Numbered from the stretch's first letter, positions 1,596-60,618 are shown. The stretch is DNA of 64,000 bases from Squalus acanthias (GCA_030390025.1 CM059427.1:188666001-188730000), one strand, 5' to 3'. Numbers and translations: made by a program. The notes: generated by a model from the letters alone, not told the origin.

Positions 1596-1937
1596 ATTTA
1601 TATCGGAAGAGTTACACACTTTATCGGTCAGGCACAGATCACAGTGAACTCGACCTGATTTGCTATTATGCTTATGCTACTTACAACACTGCTGCATGGA
1701 CCTGGAGGTCACATCATCTTCAAAATCAGAAGAAAGCAATAGCATCTGCTTCAATATCTCAGCTCATCAATGGAGACAGGACCTACTTTGGGAGTCGACT
1801 GGTGCCCACAGAGACAAAGTTTAATGGCAAGAACTTCAGTGTGAGGATTGTCCCTGTGCTGTTTGAAGATGCAGGAGTTTACACATGTTCTCTGGAATCA
1901 TATAAATTTGTGACCATTAAACTAATCACAGTTAAAG
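1596..1937 (+). CDS. Receptor gene 1, exon A1: V-set Ig domain (CD4/LAG-3-like multi-Ig receptor)
   Basis: ttgcag acceptor, AAAG|gtagga donor, 342 nt, phase 1-1, open. B-strand LIC, C-strand WTW, FSVRI..FEDAGVYTC F-strand motif. Paralogous to 11393-11731. Confidence 0.92.
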
Positions 1938-2015
1938 GTAGGAGACAGAATGTTGTCGTTGTTTTCAGTGATAAAGTTATTGTTTAAAATCTAAATGATT
2001 TTCTTGTTTCCACAG

Positions 2016-2285
2016 TCACAGCTGAACCATCTGATGCAGTGAATGAGGGAGACACCGTTACCCTGACCTGCTCTGTCTCTGATGTCACTGAATCAATGAG
2101 ACTTGTTTGGATCAGTAGTGATGGCAAAACTGTTGAAGAGAAAACATGGAATGGACAGAATGGGGAAGAGAAATCATTGAGACTGATTATTCCGAAAGCT
2201 GACAGAGGCAGAGGGAACTGGAAATGTGCTTTGTTTTATCAAAATAGGCCCCGGGTTTTAGTCCCGTACTATCTGGAGCCCAGTG
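2016..2285 (+). CDS. Receptor gene 1, exon B1: C2-type Ig domain with WxC F strand
   Basis: ccacag acceptor, G|gtaagt donor, 270 nt, phase 1-1. VTAEPSDAVNEGDTVTLTC..LVW..GNWKC. Follows a 78-bp intron. Confidence 0.92.
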
Positions 2286-3143
2286 GTAAGTGACTCAGGG
2301 TTTGCTCTTTATATTTATATTCTCGATAGAAAATTCTGGTCACTTATTGTTCTTGTTGCCAGAAGTAGCCCCTCCTTTATATCCTGTGTGTGAGGCTCTA
2401 CAGTGGGGCAGAGTCTCAGAAAATCTACCCTGAGATAAATACTGTGTTTACAAGGGCAGGTCAGATGCTGGGGATTCTGCAAATGTCTCCCTCATCTACT
2501 CCTCGATTGCTAAGCAGTGTGTAAGATGGGGGAGAGGAGGGAGCAGAGGAGGCAGAGGCTGCCTTGATTTTGGACAAAACAGTCCATGAACTCTTTGGCT
2601 GGAAACTTTGTGGCGTCCGTGCGGCGGGATTGGAGGCGGGTCGGGAATGAAAGTTGAAATAACTTGGAGCTGGTCGGGAACCCGCCGTCATCCTGCCTCT
2701 ACGCACCTTTCCCTCTGCCACGTTTGCCAGCGCGGCAGCGACCCTAACGACAGAGGCAGCCGAGCTAATTTAGATGATTATTAGTACTTGTCAGACCCTT
2801 AATTGTCTTTTTAACCCTACCTTTCAAATTTCCCTGGATGACCACGGGAATCACACAGCTCAGGAACCACCTCTGTGAACCTGAGCCGGAAGTTCAGTGG
2901 CCATTGATCCCGTTCAGTAGTGCACAGCATGGAAAGCACAATAAATACTCCCACCTGACACCTGCTTACTTTGCTAAGGCAGGTGCTGTTGCTGACTGCA
3001 TTGTCAGCACAGATTTAGCTTTCTAGAGGTTGCAAGTGTTTTCAGCAAAGTCGGGATCCACTGTCACCTCATTGGTAGAACCTATCACACCATTGACAGA
3101 TTGCTTCTGTCATCTCTACTGACCTGCCATCTATTACATCAGC

Positions 3144-4268
3144 ATGGGTGCCGTTTATACTGTCTCACCTTGTCCTCAGAATAGGACCACGATGAGCCCC
3201 AACACCAGCAGCACCAACAATCACACCAGCAGCACCAACAATCACACCAGCAACCTTCCCCTCACCAACCTGATGCTGCACAGGACAGAGGACATCAGAG
3301 CTGCAATACGCCGGAGACGATACCCACAAAACAGGGTATACAGGCTGAGGATCAGCTTCCTCAACATGACTGAGCAGCAGTGCCAAAGGATCCTCAAGCT
3401 AACACAGCAGGTCATCGCAGACATTTGCAGATTGCTGGAGCAAAACCTGCAGCCCAGAGGAGCGGGTGGACATGCCTTACCAGTGACTGTCAAAGTCACC
3501 AGCGTCCTCAACTTCTTCGCCTCAGGCTCCTTCCAGGGATCTGCAGCAGACATTTGCGGCATCTCACAGTTGGCCGCCCACAGATGCATCACACAGAGCA
3601 CCGTTGCCCTTTTTGACAAGTCAGTCAATTATATCAACTTTGCCACTGATGAAGCCAGTGTTACTGAACGGGCGCTTGGCTTTGGCACTCTGGCTGGCTT
3701 CCCACTGGTGCAGGGCGTCATCAACTGCACACTTGTGGCCATTTGGTCACCCCATCATCACCCAGGATTCTTTGTCAACCGCAAGGGCTTCCACTCCCTC
3801 AATGTGCAGCTCGTCTCCAATCATAGGAAGATCATCATGCACGTGTGCGCCAAATTCCCTGGCAGCTGCCTTGATTTTTCGTCCTGCACCAGTCCACCCT
3901 CCCTCAGCTCTTCGCTGCTCCAAACAGACTTTCCGGCTGGCTGCTTGGAGACAAGCCGTGGCTCATGACACCCTTGAGGAGGCCAAGTACTGAGGCCGAG
4001 GAGAGATATAGCCAGGCTCTCCAGAATCGTCATGCTCTCCTGTGCCCTGCACAACACAGCGCAGCAGCGAGGATCAGCCCTGTATGAGGAGAAAGACACT
4101 GAGTGCACGGCCTCTTCAGAGGAGGAGGAGGAGGAGGAGGAGGAGCATCAGCTTGAAGACCAGGAGGAGCAGGAGCAGGAGGAACCTGCGGTCCAGATCC
4201 CACCATCACCCGAGTACATTGCTGCCCAGAAGGCCAGTTATGGTCTCATCATGGTCAGATTTAATTAA
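3144..4268 (+). pseudogene. Harbinger (HARBI1-like DDE) transposase, frameshifted
   Basis: Motifs [51 protein letters not shown] and an acidic C-terminus. Frameshifts and a deletion near 3880-4030. Confidence 0.9.
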
Positions 4269-4558
4269 CTTCAGGCATTACATCCTGGCTGCCATATGCT
4301 GCGCCAGGCTCCCAACACCCCACACCAACACCATAAAGCATCCCTACAATGAACAAAAATTCCTTTCACACTGACCGCCATTGCTGGAGGTAACGTTATG
4401 ACTCACTATTCACTCCAACTCGCTGAACCACTTCCAAATTTGCAGACAGAATTCGCCATGACCGGAAAGTGGTGAAAATAATCATTTTTTTCTGTGACAT
4501 CAGATTAACGGAAACTTCACACAGTTATTAAAACACACAAGTGCTTACCCTTGTGCAT

Positions 4559-5116
4559 CTACTTGTGTGTCATCTTTCTCTTACATGTGCTTCTACGAGG
4601 TGCTACCCCTATGGCTTCAACAGAGGTAGAGGCAGCCTGCTTACTTCCCTGCTGCGACTGCATAGACACTTTTGGCGGACGTCCTCTAGGTCTAGGGGCC
4701 TGTGATGGCCCCGCTAATGCCTGCTCCTCCTGTGACAGTGCACGGGCAGATTCGACCATCGCGATCCCAGGAGGCATGTGGGGCTCTGTCTGAGGGGGAG
4801 GCAACAGGGGAGAAGTGTGAGCGCTTTCAGAGGAGCTCCTATTTTTATGTCCCTTCTCACCATCATCCCTCTCATGGGACACCCGCACATCCCTGCTAGC
4901 AAGGAGGTGGACAGCACCTTGCTGCACAGCAGTGGGTCCATGAGGACCCAAGTCTACATTTACATCCCTCCTAGAGAGGACGTCGATGAGCATCTGCCAT
5001 CTATTCCTCATAGATAGCCATCTATTCTCCATAGATTCCATGTGCTCATGTGAGTGGTGCATTAGCAGCTCCATGCAGGTGGCTATCCTTTCCATGGAAA
5101 AGCATACAGTTGCCAT
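4559..5116 (-). pseudogene. Harbinger Myb/SANT partner protein, last-exon fragment
   Basis: Ends PRPRGRPPKVS...APRRSTCKRKMTHK*, homologous to 26307-26951 and 33035-33586. Confidence 0.8.
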
Positions 5117-5674
5117 CGCCAGGTTCAGGGTTCAACTTGTTGTTGAGAACACTCAGCTCTCCCTCTCCACCATTTCCCATAACCCCCACGACTACCTTTG
5201 GTCTTCAGCCTTCAGCCACAGTCTGAAATTACCACTAAATATCTCCACCTCTCCATTTCTCCGTGCCCCTTAAAAACATTCTCCAAACCCTTTTCTTTCA
5301 ATGTTCAGTCATATCTCCTAACTTTCACATCATTGCTTGTTGTCTTTTGATCCTTTTACCTATTTCCCCCTCTGTGTAAACAGTCTTAGAAGGTGTTCTT
5401 CATCAAAAGTGCAATAGAAATATAAGTTTTTGGTAAACTTTTGAGGGCTAAGAAACTATCTGAGAAACAATGATCCATCATTATAAGTGTATCTATAAGA
5501 AAGTGACGTTCTTCTTTACAGCTCTTTAATGGGTGTGTATGTGCTGTCTCACTTCTGAAATGAACTATAACTAACAACATACTGAAAACAAATTGTCGAC
5601 AGTATCAATAATTACACAGATCGGATTGAGAAGTTGCTATCTGATTTTAAAATGTCGGTTCTCCTTTCTTGCAG

Positions 5675-6019
5675 GAAGCCAGAATTATATTTATTTTTTC
5701 CATCAGGAAGGCAGCTTTGTATTGAAAGGACCAGACATTCCTGGAAATTGTTCCATTGTCTGGGAATGGAGACCACACTCAGGGCAACAAACTACAAAGC
5801 AATTGGGAACTTTTAACAGAGAAGATCAGCGGTGGGCCGTGCAATGGAGCGAGGAGTACAATAATATACCAGGCATTTCTCAGAGGATACGTGAGGACTG
5901 GGGGACCCTTAATCTGAGAATCAGAAACCCCACCTTTGAACTTGCGGGATTGTTCACCTGGAGTCAGACACAGCCCAGTAAGAAAATCCTGAAACAGTAT
6001 GAAATATTTGGGATCAAAG
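5675..6019 (+). CDS. Receptor gene 1, exon C1: cysteine-less V-type Ig domain
   Basis: ttgcag acceptor, AAAG|gtaagt donor, 345 nt, phase 1-1. VLKG at the B strand, VWEW C strand, LNLRIRNPTFELAGLFTW E-F strands. Paralogous to 52382-52723. Confidence 0.9.
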
Positions 6020-6279
6020 GTAAGTAGCACAACAAATGGAAAGGATTCAATCATATAATTTTTTTGTGAGTAATTCCACAAATATTCCGAACAGAATGTT
6101 GGGATGATGTCCTGATCCTCCAGTTCTATCACCCAGCCCAGAATGAATCTCTCATTAAAAGCAGCCAGGTGGGTAAAATTCCTCTGTGCATTAGAATTAG
6201 TGGATGCACGAAGGGCTAGTAATTTTGATAGTTAGCACTAGCATGTTGTTGTAATTTTTGTCCATCCTCCTAAAATTCC

Positions 6280-6830
6280 TGAGACAATGACCTTGGAGGA
6301 GGATGGAGCGGGTGGCGATGGTGTGGAATTCGTGGCGAGGGCCGAAGACGATGGCTTCAGTCTTCCAAATATTTAACTCGAGGAAATTGCGGCTCATCCA
6401 AGACTGGATGTTAGACAAGTGATCTGACAGCACAGAGGTAGTGGAGGGATTGAGAGTGGTGGTGGAGAGGTAGAGCTCGGTGTCGTGAATATACGTGTGG
6501 AGCTGACCCAATGTCTTTGGATGAGGTTTAGCTGGAAGTTGGTGATCTTTGTGATGGAGACGACGTGGGGTCAGAAGCTTAGCCGAGGGCTAAAGAGTCT
6601 GCTTCAATCTGAGACAATGGCCAGGGAGAGAGATGTAGCTGCTTGTGATGTTTGGAGATCATGGTGAGGGCTGAAGAAGATGGCTTCGGTCTTCATATAT
6701 TTAACTGGAGGAAATTACAGCTCATCCAAGACTAGATGTTAGGCAAGTGATCTGACAGCACAGAGGCAGTGGAGGGATAGAGAGAAGTGGTGGAAAGGTC
6801 GAGCTGCATTTCATCAACACAGATGTGCAA
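6280..6830 (-). mobile_element. L2-like LINE RT fragment, locally duplicated
   Basis: LSNIQSWMSRNFLELNIWKTEAIVFGP is an L2-type RT motif. Segment about 6335-6480 recurs at about 6670-6805. Confidence 0.7.
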
Positions 6831-6864
6831 GCTGAGCAAATATCTTCAGATGATGATTTACGAG

Positions 6865-7304
6865 AATGTTACCAGGGGGATGAGGGTCTTCTGTTATGTG
6901 GAGAGACTGGAGAAGCTGGGGCAGAGAAGGTAAAGAGGAGATTTGATGGAGCGGTTCAAAATCATGAATGGTTTTGATAGAGTAAATAATGAGAAACTGA
7001 TTCCAGTGGCAAAAGGGTCGGTAACCAGGGAAGACAGATTTAAGGTGATTGGTGACCAGATGCAGCATGAGGAAACATTCTTTTACACAGCGAGTTGTTG
7101 TGATCCCGAATTCACTGCCTGAAAGGGTGGTGGAAGCAGATTCAAGAGTAACTTTCAAAAGAGAATTGGATAAATACTTGAAGGGAAAATATTTACAGGA
7201 TATGGGGAAAGAGCAGGGGAGTGGAACTAATTGGATAGCTCTAGCAAAGAGCCGGAACAGACACGATGCACCGAATAGCCTCCTTCTGTGCTGTATCATT
7301 CTAT
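6865..7304 (+). mobile_element. CR1 (HER1-like) LINE 3' end
   Basis: RKHSFTQRVV..NSLPERVVEADS..FKRELDKYL followed by the CR1 3' UTR and ATTCTAT tail. Confidence 0.85.
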
Positions 7305-7900
7305 GGGCCTGAAATTTGGCCCCTTAGCGCCGGCTGTTTAGGCCGGTTTTGTGGAAAAAATGTCACCCGCCTCACTTCTGCCTATTGGTGAAGCAGGCCT
7401 TAGGCTATTAACATATTCAAATAAGGGGCCTAACGCCTGCTTCTGCTCCCTCTTGCAAATTTGTCTTGCATCTGTGACAGTCAGTGCCAGCAATGTTTAC
7501 TCCCGGGAAAACAAACATTAATCAGGGCCGAATGAAAAAAAGCTAAGTACTTACCATTGGCATCTCCGACCTCACCCCCGACTCCAGCCTCCAGGCCCTC
7601 TCTGATTTCCCCCAATGAGGCCCCGACCTCCAGGTCCCCCCGATGGCCCCGACCTCCCCCCGATGTTGTCCCCGTGTCCCGATCACCCTCCGCCGATCCT
7701 GGCCCCGTGTCCCGACCTACCTCAGAGTCCTTGCTGGGTGTTCAGACACTCAGCGCGTTCAGTGCTGGGCTGAGCGCCACAATAATGATAATCAGCCGGC
7801 GGAAACAAGTCCCGGTGCTGCCTGCGATCTTTTTACGGGTGCGAGCAAACCTCGCCCCGCGGAGCCACTCCCGTTTACGGCATTATCGGATTTCTAGGCC
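7305..7900. mobile_element. Harbinger-type MITE inserted in CR1 tail
   Basis: Termini GGGCCTGAAATTT ... GATTTCTAGGCC. Preceded by TAT; the CR1 tail (GATTCTATG) resumes afterwards. Confidence 0.65.
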
Positions 7901-8120
7901 AAAGATTCTATGTTGTCAAGGAGCAGCATGTAGATGAGGAAGATGAGGGAGCCAAGGGGGACAAGTGGACATTATCTGGGAAATGTTCATAGTCAGCACT
8001 AAACACGGCTGGTCAGCATTTCTCTGAATGTGTCTGTTTGTAGAAAAAGAAAATTCTGAATGCAATAGTTCAGAGAGTTTATGGAAAGCTATACTACACG
8101 TCATTGATCTGTTTTTACAG

Positions 8121-8393
8121 TTGAGACAGATTCCCAGAGGCCTGTAATGGGCAGTGATATCACCCTCAGTTGTACCGTCTCCAGACTCTCAGATACAGTC
8201 AGTCTTCACTGGAAACCAAGAGACTCATCTCAGCAGAACAGGAGGAACAACACTGATGAGATCCATCTGAATAACACGGTCTATCTGATAGTCAGACACG
8301 TTGGAGCAGAAAATCAGGATTTGTACACATGGGAAGTGCAGGAAAATGACTCCATTGTTCTCACTGGAAACACAAATGTTGATGTGGATCAGA
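8121..8393 (+). CDS. Receptor gene 1, exon D1: C2-type Ig domain (F-strand Cys replaced by Trp)
   Basis: ttacag acceptor, A|gtaagt donor, 273 nt, phase 1-1. GSDITLSCTVS..LHW..DLYTWEVQE. Paralogous to 60349-60618. Confidence 0.9.
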
Positions 8394-11392: not shown

Positions 11393-11731
11393 ATTTACAC
11401 AATAAGTGTTACACACTTTATCGGTCAGGCACAGATCACAGTGAACTCTCCCTGATTTGTGAAGCTGAATCTGAGTTCATTAAAACTAACTGGACTTGGA
11501 GGTCACGTCATTTTCAGAATCAAGAGAAAGAAATAGCTTCTACTTTCAGATCTAAGCCTATCGAAGTAAACAGGACCTACTTTGGGGGTCGACTGGTGCC
11601 CACAGTGGGAAATCTTAATGGCAAGAACTTCAGTGTGAGGATTGTCCCCGTACTGTTTGAAGATGCAGGAGTTTACACTTGTTCTCTGGGGTTATTGAAT
11701 TATGTGACCATTAAACTAATCACAGTTAAAG
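11393..11731 (+). CDS. Receptor gene 1, exon A2: V-set Ig domain
   Basis: tttcag acceptor, AAAG|gtagga donor, 339 nt, phase 1-1, open. LIC..WTW..FEDAGVYTC, with framework near-identical to A1. Confidence 0.92.
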
Positions 11732-11772: not shown

Positions 11773-13174
11773 GGGTAGAGTTTCCGCTTTGGGCACAATC
11801 GGCGATTCCGGCACAAATTGCGCCAAAACTGCGCCCGTTTTGAAAAGTGTTTCCCCCCCACCCCCCGAGGTTCCACTCAATCTCATTTGCATATCACCAA
11901 ACACGAAATCTGCCCTGAACCAGCGCAATTGGTCAGTGATTTAAAACGTAATTTCTTTTTGCTAATTTTGCTTTAAAAATATTCTCGGCTACATTTAAGA
12001 ATGGTAACTTGGAGCAGTTTGCTTAATACAGCTGAAAGTGGGTTTATCACAAAAAATAAGCATTTTAAATCACAGTATCGATCCGCCACCTGTGAGTAAC
12101 CGATTTTAAATGACTGAAAATGTCATTAAAAAATATACAGAACTATTTTCTAGTTAGATTTGGGCACAGTACTCAGTTCCTTAGTAAATTTAAAAAAATT
12201 ATTTCAAATCCTTTCAAAACGTATGTATTCGTGTCCTTGCGACCAAAAGCTCCAGCTCCATTTTTGGGGCCTCCTCGTCGGCCTGCAACAGGCACAATTA
12301 GTGGAAACTCCCAATGGTGATTGGTTCACCCTGTGGGCGGGGCCAGTTTTGTGGGCAGGGCCAGTTTTGTGGGTGGGGCCAGTTTTGTGGGTGGTGCCAG
12401 TTTTGTGGGTGGGGCCAGTTTTGTGGGCGGGGTCAGTTTTGTGGGCGGGCCAGTTTTGTGAGCAGGGAACGTTTTGTGGGCGGGGTCAGTTTTGTGGGCG
12501 GGGTCAGTTTTGTGGGCGGGGTCAGTTTTGTAGGTGAGGCCAGTTTTGTGGGCGGGGTCAGTTTTGTAGGTGAGGCCAGTTTTGTGGGCGGGGTCAGTTT
12601 TGTAGGTGAGGCCAGTTTTGTGGGCAGGGCCAGTTTTGTGGGCGGGGTCAGTTTTGTAGGTGAGGCCAGTTTTGTGGGCGGGGTCAGTTTTGTGAGCAGG
12701 GAAAGTTTTGTGGACAGGGCCAGTTTTGTGGGCGGGGTCAGTTTTGTGGGCGGGGCCAGTTTTGTGAGCAGGGAAAGTTTTGTGGGCAGGGCCAGTTTTG
12801 CAGGTGAGGCCAGTTTTGTTGGTGTGGCCAGTTTTGTGGGCGGGGCCAATTTTGTGGACGGGGCCAGTTTTGTGGGCATGGCCAGTTTTGTAGGCAGGGC
12901 CAGTTTTGTGGGTGGGGCCAGTTTTGTGGACGTGGCCAGTTTTGTAGGCAGGGTCAGTTTTGTGGGCGTGGCCAGTTTTGTGGGCAGGGCCAGTTTTGTA
13001 GGCGGGGCCTGCTTCTAGCGCGATGTCTTTGAAACTAGAGCCAAAGATCACGGAAAATCGAGTTGCATTGAATGCAATTTGCGCTTAAAATTCCGCTATC
13101 GTTTGCGTTAGTTACGCCGATATCAGGCGAATTGTACCGAAAAAAACAACACAATGGGGTGCAAACTCCAGGAC
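11773..13174. mobile_element. MITE-like insertion in the A2-B2 intron
   Basis: Absent from the paralogous 78-bp intron 1938-2015. Imperfect TIRs GGGTAGAGTTT / AAACTCCAGGAC. Confidence 0.8.
12332..13010. repeat. 18-bp G-rich minisatellite (GGGCGGGGCCAGTTTTGT)n
   Basis: About 37 degenerate tandem units read directly from the sequence. Confidence 0.95.
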
Positions 13175-13211: not shown

Positions 13212-13481
13212 TCACAGCTGAACCATCTGATGCAGTGACTGAGGGAGACACCGTTACCCTGACCTGCTATGTCTCTGATGTCACTGAATCAATGAGACTT
13301 CTTTGGATCAGTAGTGATGGCAAAACTGTTGAAGAGAAAACTTTTAAGGACCGGAAGCAGGAAGAGGATTTGTTACGGCTGATTATTCAGAAAGCTGATC
13401 GAGACAGAAGGAACTGGACATGTGTTTTATTTCATCAAAACACGCCCAGCGTTTTAATTCCATATTATCTGAAGGTTAACA
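13212..13481 (+). CDS. Receptor gene 1, exon B2: C2-type Ig domain with WxC
   Basis: acacag acceptor, A|gtaagt donor, 270 nt, phase 1-1. GDTVTLTCYVS..LLW..RNWTC. Confidence 0.92.
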
Positions 13482-13758: not shown

Positions 13759-13990
13759 GCCCTGACCTGCTCTGTCTCTGATGTCACTGAATCAATGGAA
13801 TTTGTTTGGATCAGAAACTAAAGCAACATTGTTGAAGAGAAATCGTTCAATGGATGGAATTGGGAAGGGAAATCATTGAGACTGATTATTCAGAAAGCTG
13901 ACAGAGACAGAGGGAACTGGATATGTGTTTTCTTTTATCAAAACAGCCCCAGGTTTTACCCCTGTACTATCTGGAGCCCAGTGCTCAGTG
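13759..13990 (+). pseudogene. Relic B-type Ig exon (5'-truncated)
   Basis: LTCSVSDVTESM..SLRLIIQKADRDRGNWIC homology. In-frame TAA, frameshift near 13955, and donor gtaag changed to ctcag. Confidence 0.85.
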
Positions 13991-17296: not shown

Positions 17297-17400
17297 TGAG
17301 ACCACTTCCGGAGATTTGGATCATCACAGTTTCGGGCTACTTGTTGGTTAAACTGGGCGTTGCTGTTGGACTAATTTGCTGCTTGAAGAGGATGACCAGA
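17297..17400 (+). CDS. Receptor gene 1, transmembrane exon with intramembrane Lys
   Basis: tcacag acceptor, AGA|gtaaga donor, phase 1-0. (M)RPLPEIWIITVSGYLLVKLGVAVGLICCLKRMTR: a hydrophobic span followed by a basic stop-transfer. Confidence 0.85.
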
Positions 17401-19251: not shown

Positions 19252-19359
19252 ATATCGAACAGCGGGAATCCACACGAGGCGACAGGAAATGAAATAGATG
19301 ATTCACAAGAAGCCGTCGCATTACAGACCCTGAACTCCGATACTGATCTGAGATCATAG
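19252..19359 (+). CDS. Receptor gene 1, probable terminal cytoplasmic exon
   Basis: Pyrimidine tract plus tgtcag acceptor, phase 0 matching the TM exon. ISNSGNPHEATGNEIDDSQEAVALQTLNSDTDLRS*. Confidence 0.65.
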   Translation: MSNSGNPHEATGNEIDDSQEAVALQTLNSDTDLRS

Positions 19360-43427: not shown

Positions 43428-43430
<3 letters not shown>

Positions 43431-44889: not shown

Positions 44890-46930
44890 TCTACCATTAC
44901 CATCAAGCAAGGGGACCAACCCTGGTTCAATAAGGAGGTTAGAAGAGCATGCCAGGAGCAGCACCAGGCGTACCTAAAAATGAGGCGCCAGCCTGGGGAA
45001 GCTGCAACACAGGACTACATGCATGCTAAAAAGCGGAAGCAGCATGCTATAGACAAGGCTAAGCGATCCCACAATCAACGGATTAGATCAAAGCTCTGCA
45101 CCCCTGCCATATCCAGTTGTGAATGGTGGTGGACCATTAAACAACTAACAGGAGCAGGAGGCTCCATGAATATCCCCGTCCTCAATGATGGCAGAGCCCA
45201 GCATGTGAGTGCAAAAGACAAGGCTGAAGCGTCTGAAACCATCTTCAGCCAGAAGTGCCGAGTGCATGATCCATATCGGCCTACTCCTGAGGTCCCCACC
45301 ATCACAGAAGCCAATCTTCAGCCAATTCGATTCACTCCACGTGATATCAAGAAATGGCTGAGCGCACTGGATACAGCAAAGGCTATGGGCCCCGACAACA
45401 TCCCAGCTATCGTTCTGAAGACTTGTGCTCCAGAACTAGCCGGGCCTCTAGCCAAACTGTTCCAGTACAGCTAAAACTCTGGCATCTATCCGACAATGTG
45501 GAAAACTGCCTAGGTATGTACTGTCCACAAAAAGCAGGACAAATCCAATCCGGCCAATAACCGCCCCATCAGTCTACTTTCAATTACCAGCAAAGTGATG
45601 GAAGGTGCGGTCGACAGTGCTATCAAGTGGCACTAACTCACTAATAACCTGCTCACTGATGCCCAGTTTGGGTTCCACCAAGACCACTCAGCTCCAGACC
45701 TCATTTCAGCCTTGGTCCAAACATGGACAAAGGAGCTGAATTCCAGAGATGAGGTGAGAGTGACTGCCCTTGACATCAAGGCAGCATTTGACCGAGTGTG
45801 GCATCAAGGAGCCCTAGTACAACTGATGTCAATGGGAATCGAGGGGAAAACTCTCCACTGGCTGGAGTTGCACCTAGCACAAAGGAAGATGGTTGTGGTG
45901 GTTAGAGGTCAATCATCTCTGCCCAGGACATCACTGCAGGAGTTCCTCAGGGCAGTGTCCTAGACCCAACCGTCTTCAGCTGCTTCATCAATGACATTCC
46001 CTTCAACATAAGTCAAAAATGGGGATGTTTGCTGATGACTGCACAGTGCTCAGTGCCATTTGTAACTCCTCAGATAATGAAGCAGTCCTTGCCTGCATGC
46101 AACAAGACCTGGATGACATTCAGGCTTGGACTCATAAGTGGCTGGTAACATTCACGCCACACAAGTGCCAGGCAATGACTATCTCCAACAAGCGAGAGTC
46201 TGACCACCGCCCCTTGACATTCAACGGCATTACCATCGCTGAATCCCCCAACATCAACATCCTGGGGGTCACCATTGACCAGAAACTTAACTTGACCAGA
46301 CACATAAATACTGTGACAACAAGAGCAGGTCAGAGGCTGGGTATTCTGGGGCGAGGGTCTCACCTACTGACTCCCCAAAGCCTTTCCGCCATCTACAAGG
46401 CACAAGTAAAGATTGTGATGGAATACTCTCCACTTGCCTGGATGAGTGCAGCTCCAACAACACTCAAGAAGCTCGACACCATCCAGGACAAAGCAGCCCC
46501 CCTGATTGGCACCCCATCCACCATCTTAAATATTCACTCCGTCCACCACCGGCGCACCGTGACTGCAGTGTGTACCATCTACAAATGCAGCAACTCGCCA
46601 AAGCTGCTTCGGCAGCACCTCCCAAACCCGCAAACTATACCACCTAGAAGGACAAGGGCAGCAGACGCATAGGAACACCACCACCTCCAAGTTCCCCTCC
46701 AAGTCACACACCATCCTGACTTAAAAGTATATTTCCGATCCTTCATCGTCTCTGGGTCAAAATCCTGGAACTCCCTTCCTAACAGCATTGTGGGAGTACC
46801 TTCACCACACGGACTGCAGCGGTTCAAGAAGGCGGCTCACCACCACCTTCTCAAGGGCAATTAGGGATGGGCAATAAAAGCTGGCCTTGCCATTGATGCC
46901 CACATCCCTTGAACAAATAAAAAAAAAATG
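44890..46930 (+). mobile_element. CR1/L2-group LINE (second family), RT and 3' end, decayed
   Basis: KAMGPDNIP, ALDIKAAFDRVWH, MFADD, YKAQV..MEYSPLAW and a poly(A) tail. Confidence 0.9.
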
Positions 46931-47480: not shown

Positions 47481-47568
47481 ATGAGGCTACGATTTTTCTG
47501 CAGCAAAATGCCAGCTGGTTTGATGTTCAGTTTCTTTGTGTTTCTACTTCCGTCTGTTTTCACACAAA
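47481..47568 (+). CDS. Receptor gene 2, signal-peptide exon (exon starts 47459)
   Basis: ttacag acceptor at 47458. MRLRFFCSKMPAGLMFSFFVFLLPSVFTQ then a phase-1 donor A|gtaagt, in frame with 52382. Confidence 0.75.
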
Positions 47569-48882: not shown

Positions 48883-50580
48883 TATAGAAACATAGAAGAT
48901 AGGAGCAGGAGTAGGCCATTCGGCCCCTCGAGCCTGTTCCGCCATTTAATGAGATCATGGCTGATCATCCAAATTCAGTACCCTGTCCCTGCTTTCTCCC
49001 CATATCCCTTGATCACTTTAGCCTTAAGAAATATATTTAACTCCTTTTTGAATATATTTAATGAATTGGCCTCAACTGCCTTGTGTGGTAGAGAATTCCA
49101 CAGGTTCACCACTCTCTGGGTGAAGAAATTTCTCCTCATCTCAGTCCTAAATGGCTTACCCCTTATTCTTAGACTGTGACCCCTGGTTCTGGACTCCCCC
49201 GCCATCGGGAACATCCTTCCTGCATCTAGTCTGTCTAGTCCTGTTAGAATTTTATAAGTTTCAATGAGATCCACTCTCATTCTTCTAAACTCTAGTGAAT
49301 ATAAGCCTAATCGACCCAATCTCTCCTCATTCGTCATTCCTGCCATCCCAGGTATCAGTCTGGTGAATCTTCGCTGCACTCTCTCCATGGCAAGAACATC
49401 CTTCCTCAGATAAGGTGACCAAAACTGCACACAATACTCAAGGTGTGGTCTCACCAAGGCCCTTTACAACTGCAGCAAGACATCCTTGCTCCTGTACTTG
49501 AATCCTCTCGCAATGAAGGCCAACTGAAGTGGATAACCTCGCATTTATCCACATTATACTGCATCTGCCATGCATCTGCCCAATCACCCAACCTGTCCAA
49601 ATCATACTGGAGTTTCTCTGCATCCTCCTCACAGCACACACGCCCACCCAGCTTTGTGTCATCTGCAAACTTGGAGATATTACATCTAGTTCCCTCGTCT
49701 AGATCATTTATATATATTGTGCATAGCTGGGGTCCTAGCACCGATCCCTGCGGGACCCCACTAGTCACTGCCTGCCACTTGGAAAAAGACCCGTTTATTC
49801 CAACTCTTTGCTTCCTGTCTGCAAACCAGTTCTCTATCCAAGACAGTACCTTACCCCCAATCCCATGTGCTTTAACTTTGCAAGCTAATCTCTTATGCGG
49901 GACCTTATCGAAAACCTTCTAAAAGTCCAAATACACCACATCCACTGGTTCTCCCTTATCTATTCTACCAGTTACATCCTCAAAAAATTCCAGTAGATTA
50001 GTCAAGCATGATTTACCTTTTGTAAATCCATGTTGACTTTGTCCGATCCTGTCACTGTTTTCCAAGTGCTCTGCTATTACATCTTTTATAATGGACTCTA
50101 GCATTTTCCCCACTACCGATGTCAGACTTACTCGTTTTTTCCCGTTTTTTTCTCTACCACCTTGTTTGAATAGTGGGGTAACATTAGCTATCCTCCAATC
50201 CATGGGAACTGTTCCAGAATCTATAGAATTTTGGAAGATGACCAGCAATGCATCTACTATTTCTCAGGCCACTTCCTTAAGTACCCTAGGATGTAGATTA
50301 TCAGGCCCTGGGGATTTATCGGCCTTCAATCCCGTTAATTTCCCTAACACCATTTCCCTACAAATTCAATTTCTCCCTCTCATTAGACCCTATGTTCCCC
50401 GACATCTCTGGGAGGTTATTTGTGTCCTCCTTTGTGAAGACAGAACCAAAGTATGTATTTAATTGGTCTGCGATTTCTTTGTTCCCCATTATAAATTCCC
50501 CTGATTCTGAGTGCAAGGGACCTACGCTTGACTTCACCAATCTTTTTCTCTTCACAGATCTATAGAAGTTTTTACAGTCA
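48883..50580 (-). mobile_element. CR1 (HER1-like) LINE, RT and 3' end
   Basis: GVPQGSVLGP, KFADDTKLGG and RPHLEYCVQFWSP motifs plus the tail. Confidence 0.92.
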
Positions 50581-52381: not shown

Positions 52382-52723
52382 GAAACCCAAATCATATTTA
52401 TTTTTTGGATAAGGGAGATGACATTCCATTAAAAGGACCAGACAATCCGGGGAATGGCCCTGTTGTCTGGGAATGGAAACCACACTCAGGGCAAGAAATC
52501 CAGCGGCTGGTTACTTTTCACAAAGGGAGTTCGAGCTGGTGGGACGCACAATGGAACGATCACTTTAGAAACAGCGACTTGTACCAGATGATAGAATGGA
52601 ATTATTGGACCATTAATCTGAGAATTAAAAAACCCACATTTAAATTTGCGGGATCGTTCACCTTGACTAAAACACAGCCGAATAATAAAATCCTGAAACA
52701 GTACGAAATATTTGGGATCAAAG
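52382..52723 (+). CDS. Receptor gene 2, exon C: N-terminal cysteine-less V-type Ig domain
   Basis: taacag acceptor, AAAG|gtgagt donor, 342 nt, phase 1-1, open. LKGPD..VWEWKPHSGQ..INLRIKKPTFKFAGSFTL..KILKQYEIFGIK. Confidence 0.9.
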
Positions 52724-55750: not shown

Positions 55751-57975
55751 AGAAACATAGAAACATAGAGGATAGGAGCAGGAGTAGGCCATTCAGCCCC
55801 TCGAGCCTGCTCCGCCATTCGATGAGATCATGGCTGATCATCCAAACTCAGTACCCTGTACCTGCCTTCTCCCCATATCCCTTGATAGCTTTAGCTTTAA
55901 GAAATATATCTAACTCATTCTTGAATATATTTAATGACTTGGCCTCAACTACCTTCTGTGGTAGAGAATTCCACAGGTTCACCACTCTCTGGGTGAAGAA
56001 ATTCTTCCTCATTTCTGTCCTAAATGGCTTACCCCTTATCCTTAGATTATGACCCCTGGTTCTGGACTTTCCGACTATCGGGAACATTCTTCCTGCATCT
56101 AGTTTGTCCAGACCTGTCAGAATTTTATATGTTTCGATGAGATCCCCTCTCATTCTTCTATACTCCAGCGAGTATAAGCCCAATCGACCCAATCTCTCCT
56201 CATATGTCATTCCTGCCATCCCAGGTATCAGCCTTGTGAATCTTCGCTGAACTCCTTCCATGACAAGAACATCCTTCCTCAGATAAGGCGACCAAAACTG
56301 CACTCAGTACTCAAGGTGTGGTCTCACCAAGGCCCTGTACAACTGCAGCAGGAGATCCCTTTTCCTATACTCAAACCCTTTCGCTATGAAGGCCAACATA
56401 CCATTTGCCTTCTTCACCGCCTGCTGCATCTGCATGCTTACCTTCAGTGACTGGTGCACAAGGACACCCAGGTCTCGTTGCACTTCCCCTTCTCCCAATC
56501 TATTGCCATTCAGATAATAGTCTGCCTTTCTGTTTTTGACACCAAAGTGGATAACCTCGCATTTATCGATGTTATATTGCATCTGCCACGCTTCTGCCCA
56601 CTTACCCAACCTGTCCAAATGATCCTGGAGTTTCTCGGTATCCTCCTCGCAGCACACACGCCCACCCAGCTTTGTGTCATCTGCAAGCTTGGAGATATTA
56701 CATTTAGTTCCCTTATCTAGATCATTAATGTATATTGTGAATAGCTGGGGTCCAAGGACAGATCCCTGCGGTACCTCACTAGTCACTGCCTGCCACTCGG
56801 AAAAAGACCCATTAATTCCTACTCTCTGCTTTGTGTCCGCCAACCAGTTCTCTATCCAAGTCAGTACCTTGCCCCCAATCCCATGTGCCTTAATTTTACA
56901 TGCTAATCTCTTATGAGGGACCTTATTGAAAGCCTTTTGAAAGTCCAAATGCACCACATCTACTGGTTCTCCCTTATCTATTTTCCCAGTTACAGCCTCA
57001 AAAAATTCCAGTAGATTAGTCAAGCACGATTTACCTTTTGTAAATCCATGTTGACTTTGTCCGATCCTGTCACTGTTTTTCAAGTGCTCAGCTATTACAT
57101 CCTTTATAATGGACTCTAGCATTTTCCCCACTACCGATGTCAGGCTTACCGGTCTGTAATTCCCCGCTTTCTCTCTACCACCCTTTTTGAATAGTGGGGT
57201 AACATGAGCTACCCTCCAATCCATGGGTACAGTTTCAGATTCCATCGAATGTTGGAAGATGATCAGCAATGCATCTACTATTTCTAGGGCCACTTCCTTA
57301 AGTACCCTAGGATGTAGATTATCAGGCCCTGGGGATTTATCGGCCTTCAATCCCGTCAATTTCCCTAACACCATTTCCCTGCAAATACTGATTTCTTTCA
57401 GTTCCTCCCTTTCATCAGACCCTATGTTCCCCGACATCTCTGGGAGGTTATTTGTGTCCTCCTTTGTGAAGACAGAACCAGAATATGCATTTAATTGGTC
57501 TGCCATTTCTTTGTTCTCCATTATAACTTCCCCTGCTTCTGACTGCAAGGGACCGACACTTGATTTCATTAATCTTTTTCTCTTCACATATCTATAAAAG
57601 CTCTTACAGTCAGTTTTTATGTTCCCAGCAAGCTTACTTTCATATTCTATTTTCCCCTTCTTAATTAATCCCTTTGTCGAATCCTAAACTGCTCCCAATC
57701 CTCAGGGTTACTGCTTTTTCTGGCCAATTTATATGCCCTCTCCTTGGATCTTATGCTATCCCTAATTTCCCTTGTTAGCCACGGTTGAGTCACCCTTTTT
57801 GTTTTATTCTTATGCCAAACTGGGATGTACAAATTCTGCAGTTCATCCATGCAGTCTTTGAATGTTTACCATTGCCTATCCACTGTCAACCCCTTGAGTG
57901 ACATTCCCCAATGAATCCTACCCTATTCACACCTCATACCATCATAGTTTCCTTTATTTAAATTCAGGATCCTGG
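55750..57975 (-). mobile_element. CR1 (HER1-like) LINE, young copy with a nearly intact RT
   Basis: 427-aa ORF 56304-57587 continues in frame after a single TGA (EY*VQFWSP) into 55848-56303. Confidence 0.95.
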
Positions 57976-58444
57976 TCTCCCATTTCAGAGGGCAGTTGCT
58001 GTGGGTCTGGAGTTACAGGTCAGGACATCAGATTTCCTATCCTAAAGGACATTAGTGAGCCAGATGGAGTTTTTAATGGCAATCTGATAAGTTTCATGGT
58101 TGCTATTACTGATACTAGTAATTATTCCAAATTTATTTAATTAACTGAATTTAAATTGCCCAGCTACCGTGGTTGGGATTTGAACTCACCTCGCTGGGTT
58201 ATTAGTTCAGGCCTTTGGATTACTCGCCCAGTGACATTACCATTACACTACACTCTCTCTAGGAAGTGCTGAATACTGTTACCAATAGGTCCCTTGTAGT
58301 AATAAGCCTCAGCGCGATGGGACAGGAATAAGATTGGCCAGTTTCACTGCTCCTGATTGCTATCCGTGGAAATTGAACTATGCCAAGGAGTTAACAGCTT
58401 CATGAAAGCAGGGAGAGACATGGCAGAGAAAAAGAGATACATTG

Positions 58445-59690
58445 AGGGGAAATTTCACCCCAAATAACGGGCGACTTGGGGTCGGGTGGGAGGTTCCAGA
58501 GTTAAAAATCAGAATCTTGGCGCCAACTCGCCTCCAACCCGCCCACTTCTGGTTTTAATGGGACGGGGTGGGGGGGCAGGCAACCTGCTCGCAGGAGGTG
58601 AGTTGGCACTTTAAATATTATAATGAGCTTGGGTGCCTCATAGTGATCCACCATTTTAAATTTAACTGTGGGCTCGGAGATCCCGGCAGCTAAAGGGTGA
58701 CAAGGACTGCTGGATCCAGGGTTTCTGCCTCGCCAACCGCCCACAATCGGACACCCTTCACCCCCGACCCTTCTGATCTCCCCCAAACTACCCCTGAGGC
58801 CTTCGACACCCTCCCACAATAACTCCGATCTCTGATCTCCCCTCCTGCCTTCCGCTCTGCGTACTGGCCTTCCGACCCTGATCCAGACTCAGAACCCCCC
58901 TCTGGCATTCCAACCTCACCCCTCCAGCCTTCAATCCCCCTTCAGTTTCTGCTTCGCTCTCCGGTGTTCCTACCTCTCACTTCCGACCTCCGATGCCTCC
59001 TCCGGCCTTCTGAGCTCCCCCATCCGGCCTTACAGTTAAGAGGTTTTTTGCAATTTTGACACTTCTACTGAGGGCTTCCCGACGTCCGGACACCACGACA
59101 GCTCAGTGTGGCGTGCTGTGTGTCTACAGTAATGTTTCTGCATTGATGACAGGTGCAGAAGTGGTGTGAAGGATCCAATGGTGCACTGGTGAGTTTCAGA
59201 GGTAAGAAAATGTTGGGAAAATCATTTTAATGTATTTAGACTTTTCTGTAGGTGAAAGTTTTGAATTGTTTGTGTAGTCGCACCTCATTGGGAGAACCTC
59301 TCTCACCAGTGACAGATCGCTTCTGTAACCTCACCTGCAGCTGCCATCTGTTCTAGCCTAAGGAGGAGTCACTGGAGAGACTGGGTGCAAGGGCTCACGT
59401 TTGTACAGTGATTGTCAGTGTTTGCAGAACCTCAATGCTGTCAAAAACTGAAAAATCAGCTGTCAAAAAGAAAGTGTGGCCCCTTTAAGAAAACCGGCAT
59501 ATGATGCGTTATCAACTGACGTCATCTGACACTGGCTTCCTCTTAATTGGCCGGTAAGCCCACAGGGCGGGCTTAACAAGGCCAATTAACGCAAAATCGC
59601 GTCTGTGCGTCGGATGTCGTTGGGGGCGGGACTGGAACCTGGAAGGCAGCTATCCTGTCCTCAAGCCACATCGACAGAAAAATTCATGGC
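58445..59690. mobile_element. Harbinger-derived non-autonomous element
   Basis: GGGGAAATTTC and AAAATTCATGGCC termini. 59280-59580 matches the promoter-side sequences of the Harbingers at 1-130 and 41130-41330. Confidence 0.55.
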
Positions 59691-60348
59691 CAAAGTCCCT
59701 GTTGAAGATTTGATTCTTACTTGTCATATTGTAGGTGGGACTGAAAGTCAGGGTGGGCATTTTTAGAACAAGCCTCTCCTGAAGTGCCATTCCTCATGGA
59801 CGCTCAATGATTGGAGCCCTGCTCAGGAGCATTTTGGGAGCCCACTAATTTAAATAACGTAATGACTTTTGATGTGGATTTTGTGCACAGGCTCCAGTGC
59901 GTGTGTTGGGTGGTCTTACTGAAGTGTGCGAGGCACATTGAGAACAGAGTGGGACTGGAGCCTTCTCCATGTCTGATAATATGGGCGCTACATTTCCATC
60001 ACACCCTCCTCTGGTGAGATTCCATCACCTGTCCATTGTGGTGTCGGCTTCCCCAAATGTCATCCAAACCATGTAACCTTTACCTGACCCCGGATACTCC
60101 AGCAGGGTCAGGGGTAAAGGTCATCGGCCGCACTCTGGCTCACTTACGCTGGCAGAGCTGGACTGAGAATTTTCAGGCCCACTGTGTTATTCTACTGTTA
60201 AAATGCACTTGTGTGTAATCTGGCCTGAGCCTTTAATGCAGCAGGTACAAGTGCTGATGATGGGCACATCCTACGGTCAGTTAGAACCTAATTGTTGGAT
60301 TGTACATGTCACTACTTACACTAAATCTTATTGATCTGTTTTTCACAG

Positions 60349-60618
60349 TTGTGTCAAGTCCACAGAGTGCTGTGGTGGGCAGTGACGTTACACTCAGCTG
60401 TACCATCTCCAAACTCTCAGATACAGTCAGTCTTCAATGGAAACAGAGAGACTCATCTCAGCAGAACAGGAGGAACACTGATCAGATCCGACTAAATAAC
60501 ACAGTCTATCTGATAGTCAAACATGTTGCAGTAGAAGATAAGGAGTTGTATATGTGTGAAGTGCAGGAAGATGGATCCATTATTCTCACAGGAAAAGCAG
60601 ATTTTTTTGTGTACCAAT
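60349..60618 (+). CDS. Receptor gene 2, exon D: C2-type Ig domain (gene continues beyond the window)
   Basis: tcacag acceptor, T|gtaagt donor, 270 nt, phase 1-1. GSDVTLSCTIS..LQW..ELYMCEVQE, with both cysteines present. Confidence 0.92.

What the first reader, a model, noticed from the sequence alone, without database searches (positions are those of the whole stretch)
1596..60618. Tandem family of CD4/LAG-3-like multi-Ig receptors built from a permuted, repeated four-domain cassette
Seen: nine phase-compatible exons of two + strand genes encode Ig domains or a leader. Gene 1 reads A1(V)-B1(C2)-C1(Cys-less V)-D1(C2)-A2(V)-B2(C2)-TM-cyt. Gene 2 begins leader-C-D. The unit is therefore C-D-A-B, and gene 1 has at least 6 domains (8 if another C-D lies upstream of the window). 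Known: alternating V-C2-V-C2, a WxC F strand in C2 domains and a disulfide-less V domain are hallmarks of the CD4/LAG-3 family, but there the canonical V comes first and its exon is split by an intron. Inference: this is not CD4 or LAG-3 itself but a related, internally duplicated, multigene receptor family with the Cys-less V at the N-terminus.
Basis: partly seen in the sequence, partly recalled or inferred. Interest (0 to 1): 0.9.

Follow-up and report, generated by a model that had tools for sequence, protein, structure and literature searches.

The report
Unnamed shark multi-Ig paired receptor family
Two neighbouring shark genes encode cell-surface receptors built from a repeated four-domain immunoglobulin cassette; they belong to an old, widespread but still unnamed fish receptor family with activating and inhibitory versions, and a link to CD4/LAG-3 remains unproven.

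Summary
All nine exons sit at the stated places with AG/GT splice sites, and each Ig exon is a multiple of 3 long. Contigs of four probable RNA runs join B1 to C1 (4 of 4 runs) and C1 to D1 (3 of 4) exactly at the predicted sites. So gene 1 is one gene, not two.

The cassette order leader-C-D-A-B is confirmed by many predicted proteins from sharks, rays, a chimaera, sturgeons, paddlefish, bichir, bowfin and eel. Nearly all are labelled 'uncharacterized'.

C is a cysteine-less relative of A, and D is a relative of B (hhalign 96% and 95.5%). The cassette is therefore an old V-C2 duplication.

Gene 1 ends in a transmembrane exon with a central lysine and a 35-residue tail without tyrosine. Relatives have either this or a neutral membrane span with ITIM-like tails. 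That is the pattern of a paired activating/inhibitory receptor family.

Specific kinship with CD4/LAG-3 is not shown. Unchecked notes of this scan report similar receptors 0.7 and 1.9 Mb upstream on other DNA of this genome.

The parts
1596..1937 (+). Gene 1, exon A1: V-type Ig domain with Cys, Trp and YTC.
   Evidence: Splice sites and phase. Pfam V-set E 2.5e-5, below the cut-off. 68% identical to A2.
2016..2285 (+). Gene 1, exon B1: C2-type Ig domain with NWKC (WxC) in the F strand.
   Evidence: The donor at 2285 is joined to 5675 in contigs of 4 of 4 runs.
5675..6019 (+). Gene 1, exon C1: V-like domain without the canonical disulfide pair (one lone Cys); carries VWEWxPH and the AG.F motif.
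   Evidence: No Pfam hit and no PDB sequence hit. The family C profile aligns to the A profile at hhalign 96%. V-set-like by language-model features. Joined to B1 and to D1.
8121..8393 (+). Gene 1, exon D1: C2-like Ig domain in which the F-strand Cys is replaced by Trp (LYTWEV).
   Evidence: The same Cys-to-Trp change is in 35 of 162 D domains of relatives, nearly all in the second cassette. The acceptor at 8121 is joined to 6019 in 3 of 4 runs.
11393..11731 (+). Gene 1, exon A2: second V-type domain.
   Evidence: 83% identical to a Pristiophorus japonicus protein, P0076 residues 567-679.
13212..13481 (+). Gene 1, exon B2: second C2 domain with NWTC.
   Evidence: Up to 85% identical to relatives.
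13759..13956 (+). Decayed extra copy of a B exon in the B2-TM intron, with an in-frame stop. Probably not coding.
   Evidence: Translation. tblastn 61-68% identical to B2 and B1 over 64-66 residues.
17297..17400 (+). Gene 1, transmembrane exon RPLPEIWIITVSGYLLVKLGVAVGLICCLKRMTR, with a central Lys.
   Evidence: 28 relatives match here. The motif GYL(L/F)VKL is shared with 36 TM-Lys relatives. Its link to B2 is inferred from relatives and was not seen in reads.
19252..19359 (+). Gene 1, last coding exon: 35-residue tail ISNSGNPHEATGNEIDDSQEAVALQTLNSDTDLRS plus stop, with no tyrosine.
   Evidence: 9 relatives match; the best is 88% identical to the end of P0097.
47508..47568 (+). Gene 2, leader exon MPAGLMFSFFVFLLPSVFTQ with a GTAAGT donor in phase 1. 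An upstream in-frame ATG lies at 47481.
   Evidence: The N-termini of 59 relatives match here.
52382..52723 (+). Gene 2, exon C: N-terminal Cys-less V-like domain.
   Evidence: 50% identical to C1. Up to 73% identical to the N-terminal C domain of a Pristiophorus protein.
60349..60618 (+). Gene 2, exon D: C2-type domain with LYMCEV. The gene continues beyond the window.
   Evidence: Ig_3 E 1.5e-8. Up to 86% identical to relatives.

Best explanation
The window holds the 3' part of one gene and the 5' part of the next, both on the + strand. Gene 1 reads A1-B1-C1-D1-A2-B2-TM-tail. Gene 2 reads leader-C-D and continues beyond the window.

Both belong to an unnamed immunoglobulin-superfamily receptor family of cartilaginous and early-branching ray-finned fishes. 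Its building block is a four-exon cassette:
- C, a V-like domain without the disulfide
- D, a C2-type domain with YxC
- A, a canonical V domain
- B, a C2-type domain with WxC

The cassette arose from an old V-C2 duplication. In relatives it is used once, twice or more often.

The proteins are type I membrane receptors. Gene 1 is of the activating type, with a lysine in the middle of the membrane span and a short tail without tyrosine. I infer that it signals through an ITAM-bearing adaptor of the DAP12/FcR-gamma kind. Relatives with near-identical ectodomain design carry a neutral membrane span and long tails with ITIM-like motifs. The family therefore works as paired activating/inhibitory receptors.

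I also infer that the membrane-distal C domain of four-domain forms binds the ligand. The ligand itself is unknown.

Shown: the exons, their splicing B1-C1-D1, the homology, the domain relations and the two tail types. Inferred: adaptor coupling, ligand binding, expression on leukocytes and an immune function.
For: Exon anatomy.

Splicing: joints 2285>5675 in 4 of 4 runs and 6019>8121 in 3 of 4 runs, both GT..AG. Depth is on the exons and near zero on non-repeat intron.

Family range: the C-domain profile finds only 40 proteins at E up to 1e-3 among 1.84 billion representatives. All 16 of the 20 looked up that carry an organism name are fishes. The profile of twelve four-domain members gives 117 hits, nearly all 'uncharacterized'.

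Architectures: the local domain survey of the 163 proteins then stored shows mostly CDAB and CDABCDAB.
- S. canicula XP_038652085 reads D-(ABCD)x3-AB.
- Mobula P0004 reads CDABCDAB, with the same Cys-to-Trp D as D1.

Domain relations: hhalign A~C 96% (E 3.9e-9) and B~D 95.5% (E 1.4e-8).

Tails in 158 family proteins:
- 36 with a TM Lys and no ITIM-like motif (median tail 37 residues)
- 51 with a neutral TM and at least one ITIM-like motif (median tail 118.5 residues)
- 23 with a neutral TM and no such motif
- 47 without a TM or partial
- 1 false Lys call

The GYLxVK motif is kept from sharks to sturgeon and bowfin.
Against: - No experiment or tissue label ties the genes to leukocytes.
- The runs are only guessed to be RNA, and their organisms and tissues are coded.
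- The joined contigs are short. The shorter side is 23-38 letters, and only some reach 31.
- The listed pieces differ from the window by up to about 7% (for example 8 of 230 letters in the one listed piece at the B1-C1 joint). They may come from an allele, a sister species or a very close paralogue.
- The links A1-B1, D1-A2, A2-B2, B2-TM and TM-tail rest on homologous gene models only.
- Those gene models are mostly automatic predictions and some are clearly faulty. P0001 starts with transposon-derived residues.
- 23 of 158 relatives have neither a TM Lys nor an ITIM by my simple pattern.
- Gene 2's tail lies outside the window.
Confidence: 0.75

Rival explanations
1. The family is a true offshoot of the CD4/LAG-3 lineage. 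It would share with them a specific V-C2-V-C2 ancestor with WxC, and might likewise bind MHC class II-like ligands. The cassette would be circularly permuted relative to CD4 (D3-D4-D1-D2).
For: - V-C2-V-C2 built by a V-C2 duplication.
- WxC, called 'very unusual' in PMC10768021 (passages read), is in 159 of 163 B domains.
- LAG-3 is the third-ranked molecule for the four-domain profile (E 2.2e-12).
- LAG-3 is among the first four molecules, third row, for the AB profile (E 4.2e-7). That alignment runs over the whole B domain including W-x-C.
- B1 alone aligns end to end with LAG-3 D2 at E 0.03.
Against: - WxC is absent from all 162 D domains.
- CD276 scores better than LAG-3, and no single aligned stretch is significant (independent E 0.03-0.2).
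- CD4 itself appears only at E 8.5e-4 and is not in the top 60.
- No family other than general Ig-type ones is among the 25 most matched in 12 members.
- Neither Cx(C/H) nor (F/Y)xxL(D/E) is in gene 1's tail.
- The family is multigene rather than one gene per genome.
- The permutation has no support of its own.
Confidence: 0.25
2. The family belongs with the CEACAM or CD2/SLAM groups. These also start with a V-type domain lacking the disulfide, followed by C2 domains, and they include paired ITIM and activating members.
For: - The N-terminal C domain has no cysteine in 105 of 144 cases and a possible pair in at most 1 of 144.
- One isoform is auto-named 'CEACAM5-like'.
- CEACAM1 matches the four-domain profile over the C-D part at E 2e-7, but with no significant single stretch.
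- PMC5112662 says CEACAM members exist in cartilaginous fishes (passage read).
Against: - C1 finds nothing in the PDB at E up to 10, although CEACAM N domains are present there (they are hit).
- The C-D profile hits only the D part; no CEACAM, CD2 or SLAM chain is in the 60 rows shown of 203.
- The closest detectable relative of C is the family's own A domain.
- D has one disulfide. My recollection that CD2/SLAM C2 domains have two is from memory and was not tested.
Confidence: 0.08
3. The proteins are structural or adhesion molecules, as the automatic names 'obscurin-like' and 'VCAM1-like' suggest, and not signalling immune receptors.
For: - Long chains of Ig domains occur: 15 in the S. canicula model and 20 in an eel model.
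- Titin is the top PDB hit of the four-domain profile through summed weak domain matches.
- Automatic names of this kind appear.
Against: - The split into TM-Lys short-tail forms and ITIM-like long-tail forms is typical of immunoreceptors.
- A signal peptide and a single membrane span are present.
- Genes are clustered and vary in copy number between species.
Confidence: 0.07

Closest known systems
CD4 / LAG-3 family
   Same: - Type I receptors with V-C2-V-C2 built from a duplicated V-C2 pair.
- WxC in the F strand of a C2 domain.
- One exon per Ig domain, as in shark CD4 and LAG-3.
- Weak profile matches to LAG-3.
   Different: - WxC is only in the second C2 of the cassette.
- The first V lacks the disulfide in nearly all members.
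- The cassette is iterated to 8, 15 or 20 domains.
- There are many genes per genome.
- Tails have a TM Lys or ITIM-like motifs instead of Cx(C/H) or (F/Y)xxL(D/E).
- No CD4-specific sequence signal was found.
Paired activating/inhibitory Ig receptor families (KIR, LILR, CD300, fish NITR, LITR, NILT, DICP). This list of families is from my own knowledge; only the abstracts listed were seen.
   Same: - Clustered multigene families.
- Closely similar ectodomains joined either to a charged membrane span with a short tail or to a neutral span with ITIM tails.
- Variable domain number.
   Different: - A different domain cassette (Cys-less V, C2, V, WxC-C2) with no significant sequence match to those families in any search here.
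- The family is much older and is shared by chimaera, sharks, rays and early ray-finned fishes.
B7 family, 4-Ig CD276 (B7-H3)
   Same: - Tandem V-C-V-C.
- Best PDB hit of the A-B profile (E 2e-9).
- B looks CD80-like C2-set by language-model features.
- Some short gene models are auto-named 'CD276 antigen homolog'.
   Different: - The matches cover only the end of V and the start of C, and each stretch is not significant on its own.
- From my own knowledge, B7 proteins are ligands without a TM Lys or ITIM dichotomy and without WxC.
Teleost G6F-like (G6fL)
   Same: - Four extracellular Ig-like domains and one membrane span (passages of PMC3528668).
- Said to resemble CD4/LAG-3. That statement is recalled from the abstract of Ohashi et al. 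2010, which I did not see.
- Sturgeon relatives end in YxN-like motifs.
   Different: - No G6F-named protein appeared in any search.
- G6fL has an ITAM in its own tail.
- No G6fL sequence was on hand, so this was not tested directly.

Membership tests
CD4/LAG-3 | Ectodomain V-C2-V-C2 derived from a V-C2 duplication | tested here: met
   hhalign of family domain profiles: A~C 96% (E 3.9e-9) and B~D 95.5% (E 1.4e-8). The order C-D-A-B is seen in most relatives.
CD4/LAG-3 | WxC in the F strand of both C2 domains (D2 and D4) | tested here: not met
   WxC is in 159 of 163 B domains and 0 of 162 D domains. D has Y/F-x-C in 119 of 162 and LYxWE in 35 of 162. The feature is taken from PMC10768021.
CD4/LAG-3 | Cytoplasmic Cx(C/H) (CD4) or (F/Y)xxL(D/E) (LAG-3) | tested here: not met
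   Gene 1's tail CCLKRMTR-ISNSGNPHEATGNEIDDSQEAVALQTLNSDTDLRS has neither motif. Gene 2's tail lies outside the window.
CD4/LAG-3 | Usually one gene of each per haploid genome, in tandem in a conserved region | tested here: not met
   Many distinct loci per species; for example at least 10 Mobula birostris proteins on one 190-Mb record. Two tandem genes lie in this window.
CD4/LAG-3 | CD4/LAG-3 are the top matches in similarity searches | tested here: inconclusive
   LAG-3 scores E 2.2e-12 but ranks behind titin and pIgR. CD276 is ahead of LAG-3 for the A-B profile and single stretches are not significant. No family other than general Ig-type ones is among the 25 most matched, of 31 hit in 12 members.
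Paired activating/inhibitory Ig receptors (functional class) | Activating members have a charged residue in the membrane span and a short tail without signalling motifs | tested here: met
   Gene 1 TM exon ...GYLLVKLGVAV... and a 35-residue tail without Tyr. 36 of 158 relatives have the same design.
Paired activating/inhibitory Ig receptors (functional class) | Inhibitory members have a similar ectodomain, a neutral span and ITIM tails | tested here: met
   51 of 158 relatives qualify, with a median tail of 118.5 residues. This was not seen inside the window itself.
Paired activating/inhibitory Ig receptors (functional class) | Association with an ITAM adaptor, phosphatase recruitment and leukocyte expression | not testable with these tools
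   Needs experiments or labelled expression data. The run labels were coded.
CEACAM or CD2/SLAM | N-terminal V-type domain without the canonical disulfide | tested here: met
   No cysteine in 105 of 144 C domains, and a possible pair in at most 1 of 144.
CEACAM or CD2/SLAM | Sequence similarity of the N domain to CEACAM N or CD2/SLAM V domains | tested here: not met
   C1 against the PDB gives 0 hits at E up to 10. The C-D profile hits only the D part in the 60 rows shown of 203. No Pfam hit for either C exon.
G6F-like | Four Ig domains with YxN and an ITAM in the protein's own tail; orthology to G6F | not tested
   No G6fL sequence was available. No protein with that name appeared. The features come from passages of PMC3528668.

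The most novel reading that the evidence does not exclude
This family could be the ancient fish counterpart of KIR/LILR-type variable paired receptors. It would descend from the same V-C2 ancestor as CD4 and LAG-3 and would likewise read MHC or MHC-like ligands. Sharks would then have a germline-encoded, modular MHC-sensing system of 4, 8, 15 or 20 domains for NK-like or myeloid cells, kept for more than 400 million years.
Probability: 0.1. Interest if true: 0.85.

Novelty: new variant of a known kind. Interest (0 to 1): 0.6.

Why it matters
Which receptors NK-like and myeloid cells of cartilaginous fishes use is, to my knowledge, still largely open.

Here is a large and expressed gene family with a distinctive modular cassette. 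It is conserved from chimaera to bowfin and eel and has both an activating form and an inhibitory form. Databases list its members almost only as 'uncharacterized', and nine literature searches found no paper on it.

The finding gives concrete candidates for expression, adaptor-binding and ligand screens. The WxC-bearing V-C2 pair also offers a test case for the origin of CD4 and LAG-3.

It is not a new principle. Paired Ig receptors are well known, and the gene models already exist in public annotation.

Tried and rejected
**CD4 or LAG-3 proper.** Rejected on motifs, copy number and tails.

**Two separate genes (A1-B1 and C1 onward).** Rejected by the 2285>5675 joint in 4 of 4 runs.

**Pseudogene array.** Rejected by the intact frames, by cross-species conservation including the Cys-to-Trp D domain, and by the spliced contigs. 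Only the extra B copy at 13759-13956 is decayed.

**PDB sequence searches with single exons**. These gave only generic Ig matches, and none for C.

**Link to teleost G6F-like.**
- Search with sturgeon P0028: 9 hits, none named.
- Search with a ray-finned-fish alignment: 5 hits, with the candidate list cut at 8000.
- Neither bridged to any named family. This does not exclude G6F-like.

**Literature searches:**
- CD4 + LAG-3 + shark
- G6F-like + CD4 + LAG-3: 0 papers
- G6F-like: 6 papers
- cartilaginous fish + ITIM and related terms
- obscurin-like + nurse shark: 0 papers
- shark + paired receptors and related terms
- WxC + Ig-like + CD4: 3 papers
- six gene or protein identifiers: 0 papers
- V-C2-V-C2: 3 papers

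None of these describes this family. Subscription journals are not covered and supplements were closed. The supplementary sequence lists of PMC10768021 might mention related shark genes.

**Notes of this scan**. Used as leads only.

Full report
**1. The observation**

Gene 1:
- A1 1596-1937
- B1 2016-2285
- C1 5675-6019
- D1 8121-8393
- A2 11393-11731
- B2 13212-13481

Gene 2:
- leader 47508-47568
- C 52382-52723
- D 60349-60618

Each Ig exon starts after a pyrimidine tract and AG, ends before GT, and has a length divisible by 3. All are therefore phase 1-1 and can be joined in any order.

Pfam results:
- B1, B2 and gene-2 D pass Pfam's own cut-off for Ig families.
- A1, A2 and D1 match more weakly, below the cut-off.
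- Neither C exon matches anything.

Inside the window the copies pair as A1/A2 68%, B1/B2 76%, C1/C 50% and D1/D 67% identical. A ninth Ig-like piece at 13759-13956 is a decayed B copy with an in-frame stop.

Downstream of B2 lie two more coding exons:
- a transmembrane exon, 17297-17400, RPLPEIWIITVSGYLLVKLGVAVGLICCLKRMTR
- a last coding exon, 19252-19359, giving 35 residues without tyrosine

**2. Are the exons spliced as proposed?**

The one sequencing-run search returned 20 runs from 9 studies. None is on record as RNA, and ten are guessed to be RNA.

I laid the contigs of four of those guessed RNA runs (X3, X6, X9, X12; two studies, two coded organisms) on 2200-8199 at 93% likeness.
- A joint 2284>5674, GT..AG with the cut one place further, equals 2285>5675. 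It appears in 4 of 4 runs.
- A joint 6017>8119 with the cut two places further equals 6019>8121. It appears in 3 of 4 runs and not in X9.
- These are exactly the predicted B1 donor, C1 acceptor, C1 donor and D1 acceptor.
- Depth lies on the exon bins (2200-2399, 5600-5999, 8000-8199). It is near zero on non-repeat intron and very high on transposon parts. This fits RNA.

Limits of this evidence:
- The contigs are short. The shorter side of a joint is 23-38 letters, and it reaches 31 only in X3 and X9 for B1-C1 and in X12 for C1-D1.
- The listed pieces differ from the window by up to about 7%; the one listed piece at the B1-C1 joint differs in 8 of 230 letters. They may come from another allele, a sister species or a very close paralogue.

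The other junctions were not covered by reads.

**3. What the genes belong to**

A profile of the two C exons was searched against 1.84 billion cluster representatives. It found only 40 proteins at E up to 1e-3. Twenty of them were looked up.
- Sixteen carry an organism name. They come from sharks, rays, the chimaera Callorhinchus, sturgeons, bowfin and eel.
- Four come from unnamed metagenome or assembly records.
- Paddlefish and bichir relatives appeared.
- Their names are 'uncharacterized', 'hypothetical' or 'Ig-like domain-containing'.

A profile of twelve four-domain members gave 117 hits, again almost all unnamed. The stray automatic names are obscurin-like, VCAM1-like, CD276 homolog and, for one cluster member, CEACAM5-like.

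No protein is more than 93% identical to any window exon. The best matches are from Pristiophorus japonicus, Heptranchias perlo and Heterodontus francisci. The source species, probably a shark related to these, is therefore not in the protein collection.

I built local HMMs for the four domain types and annotated the 163 proteins then stored.
- The commonest architectures are CDAB after a signal peptide and CDABCDAB.
- S. canicula XP_038652085 reads D-(ABCD)x3-AB, then a TM and a long tail.
- An eel model has 20 domains.
- In these models B is followed directly by C, as in gene 1.

Window C1-D1-A2-B2 match the last four domains of the S. canicula and Mobula long forms at 64-85% identity. This includes the odd D domain in which the F-strand Cys is Trp (LYTWEV).

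That change is present in 35 of 162 D domains, nearly all in the second cassette. It is therefore a conserved trait and not decay.

Gene 2's leader, C and D match the N-terminal part of four-domain proteins such as Pristiophorus P0006 at 70-82%. The N-termini of 59 relatives align to the leader exon.

It could not be checked inside the window.

**4. Nature of the domains**

hhalign of the family-wide domain alignments gives A against C 96% probability (E 3.9e-9) and B against D 95.5% (E 1.4e-8). The cross pairs A-B, B-C and C-D are poor.

In the A-C alignment:
- The WxW of strand C lines up with VWEW.
- FEDAGvYtC lines up with FkxAGlFTl.
- A's B-strand Cys faces a Gly or another residue.

So C is a V-type domain that lost the disulfide. 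No cysteine is present in 105 of 144 C domains, and a possible pair in at most 1 of 144.

Language-model features also place C among V-set domains (0.95, CD200R1-like cluster). They place B among CD80-like C2-set domains. These are leads only.

The cassette is thus an old V-C2 duplication.

**5. How it probably works**

Among 158 family proteins, excluding two loach and three non-family hits:
- 36 have a lysine in the middle of the membrane span, no ITIM-like motif and a short tail (median 37 residues).
- 51 have a neutral span and at least one ITIM-like motif, with a median tail of 118.5 residues.
- 23 have a neutral span without such a motif.
- 47 lack a span or are partial.
- 1 was a false lysine call.

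The lysine motif GYL(L/F)VKL of sharks and rays recurs as GYLTVK in sturgeon and GYLGVK in bowfin.

Gene 1 is of the lysine type. The only family-like TM exon in the window is the one at 17297. By analogy with KIR, LILR, CD300 and TREM-type receptors, which I know from the field and did not test here, I infer the following:
- Gene 1's product pairs with an ITAM adaptor of the DAP12 or FcR-gamma kind.
- The ITIM-tailed relatives inhibit.

The N-terminal C domain of gene 2 is less conserved than the internal C1 (73% against 88% best identity to other species) and differs most between the two window genes (50%). This is consistent with a ligand-binding tip. It is a weak argument.

**6. Comparison with known families**

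*CD4/LAG-3.* I read the abstract and sections 3.1 and 3.6 (sections 10 and 15 of the outline), plus found passages, of PMC10768021. The family traits given there are:
- V-C2-V-C2 from a V-C2 duplication
- WxC in both D2 and D4
- Cx(C/H) or (F/Y)xxL(D/E) tails
- usually one gene each, in tandem

Only the first trait is met here.
- WxC is in B (159 of 163) but never in D (0 of 162).
- Gene 1's tail has neither motif.
- The family is multigene.
- The same paper says shark CD4 and LAG-3 have no intron in D1. The unsplit V exons here therefore say nothing either way.
- It also says loss of the cysteine pair occurs here and there in any domain, so a Cys-less V is not a hallmark.

Profile searches of the PDB:
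- Four-domain profile: LAG-3 scores E 2.2e-12, behind titin and pIgR.
- A-B profile: LAG-3 scores E 4.2e-7, behind CD276 at 2.1e-9. Single stretches are not significant. CD4 scores only 8.5e-4.
- C-D profile: only the D part is hit.
- Twelve members scanned against Pfam at E up to 1 hit 31 families. The 25 most matched are shown, and they are general Ig families plus single-member chance hits.

Kinship with CD4/LAG-3 is possible, and the WxC is a real lead, but it is not shown.

*CEACAM and CD2/SLAM.* They share the Cys-less first domain but show no sequence signal.

*G6F-like.* It could not be tested. No sequence was on hand and no named hit appeared.

**7. Novelty and verdict**

It belongs to an old, widespread, expressed receptor family that databases leave unnamed. 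Nine literature searches found no paper on it. Subscription journals and supplements were not seen.

As a kind of system it is a paired activating/inhibitory Ig receptor family, which is well known. The cassette (Cys-less V, C2, V, WxC-C2), its modular repetition and its age are new features. I rate it a new variant of a known kind, with interest 0.6.

Unchecked notes of this scan report similar multi-Ig receptors 0.74 and 1.92 Mb upstream, and ITIM-type tails just beyond the window's end. The locus may therefore be part of a much larger cluster.

Noticed in passing
window 8121-8393; relatives such as P0004 residues 552-640: The D domain of the second cassette keeps its B-strand Cys but has Trp in place of the F-strand Cys (LYxWE). 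This is seen in 35 of 162 D domains across sharks and rays. A conserved unpaired cysteine might serve dimerisation. Unexplained.
   Followed up: partly
window 12332-13009 and 22387-23067: Two minisatellites. One has an 18-bp unit in 37.7 copies inside the A2-B2 intron. The other has a 42-bp unit in 16.2 copies downstream of gene 1. Both create long spurious ORFs on both strands.
   Followed up: partly
window 3144-3968 (+), 27210-28060 (-), and about 25.4-27.0 kb and 32.9-34.5 kb: PIF/Harbinger-like transposon remains. DDE_Tnp_4 hits are. Near-identical accessory ORFs in opposite orientation lie at 26307-26951 (+) and 33035-33586 (-), which suggests an inverted pair of copies between the two genes. 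The copy in the B1-C1 intron is covered by the run contigs.
   Followed up: partly
window 56304-57587 (-), 46019-46672 (+), 6800-7400: LINE-type reverse transcriptase ORFs: RVT_1 E 4e-32 for a 427-aa ORF in gene 2's C-D intron. A very high-copy repeat at 6800-7400 in the C1-D1 intron reaches a summed contig depth above 30,000 in all four runs.
   Followed up: no
P0001 (S. canicula XP_038652085) residues 1-96; window 50394-50492 (-) and 57249-57524 (-): The N-terminus of this RefSeq model matches transposon-derived sequence and not a leader. The 15-domain model is probably truncated or mis-started at its 5' end.
   Followed up: partly
window 63253-63397 (+): A short stretch is similar to residues 371-420 of the S. 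torazame partial model P0034, which lie just before one of its A domains. It may be a conserved intronic or retained piece ahead of gene 2's A exon, which would lie beyond the window. Unexplained.
   Followed up: no
window 1596-1937 against 11393-11731: A1 and A2 differ mainly in three patches that sit where the BC, C'C'' and FG loops of a V domain would be, by eye from the translations. This matches another note of this scan (s1-888014). No statistics were done.
   Followed up: partly
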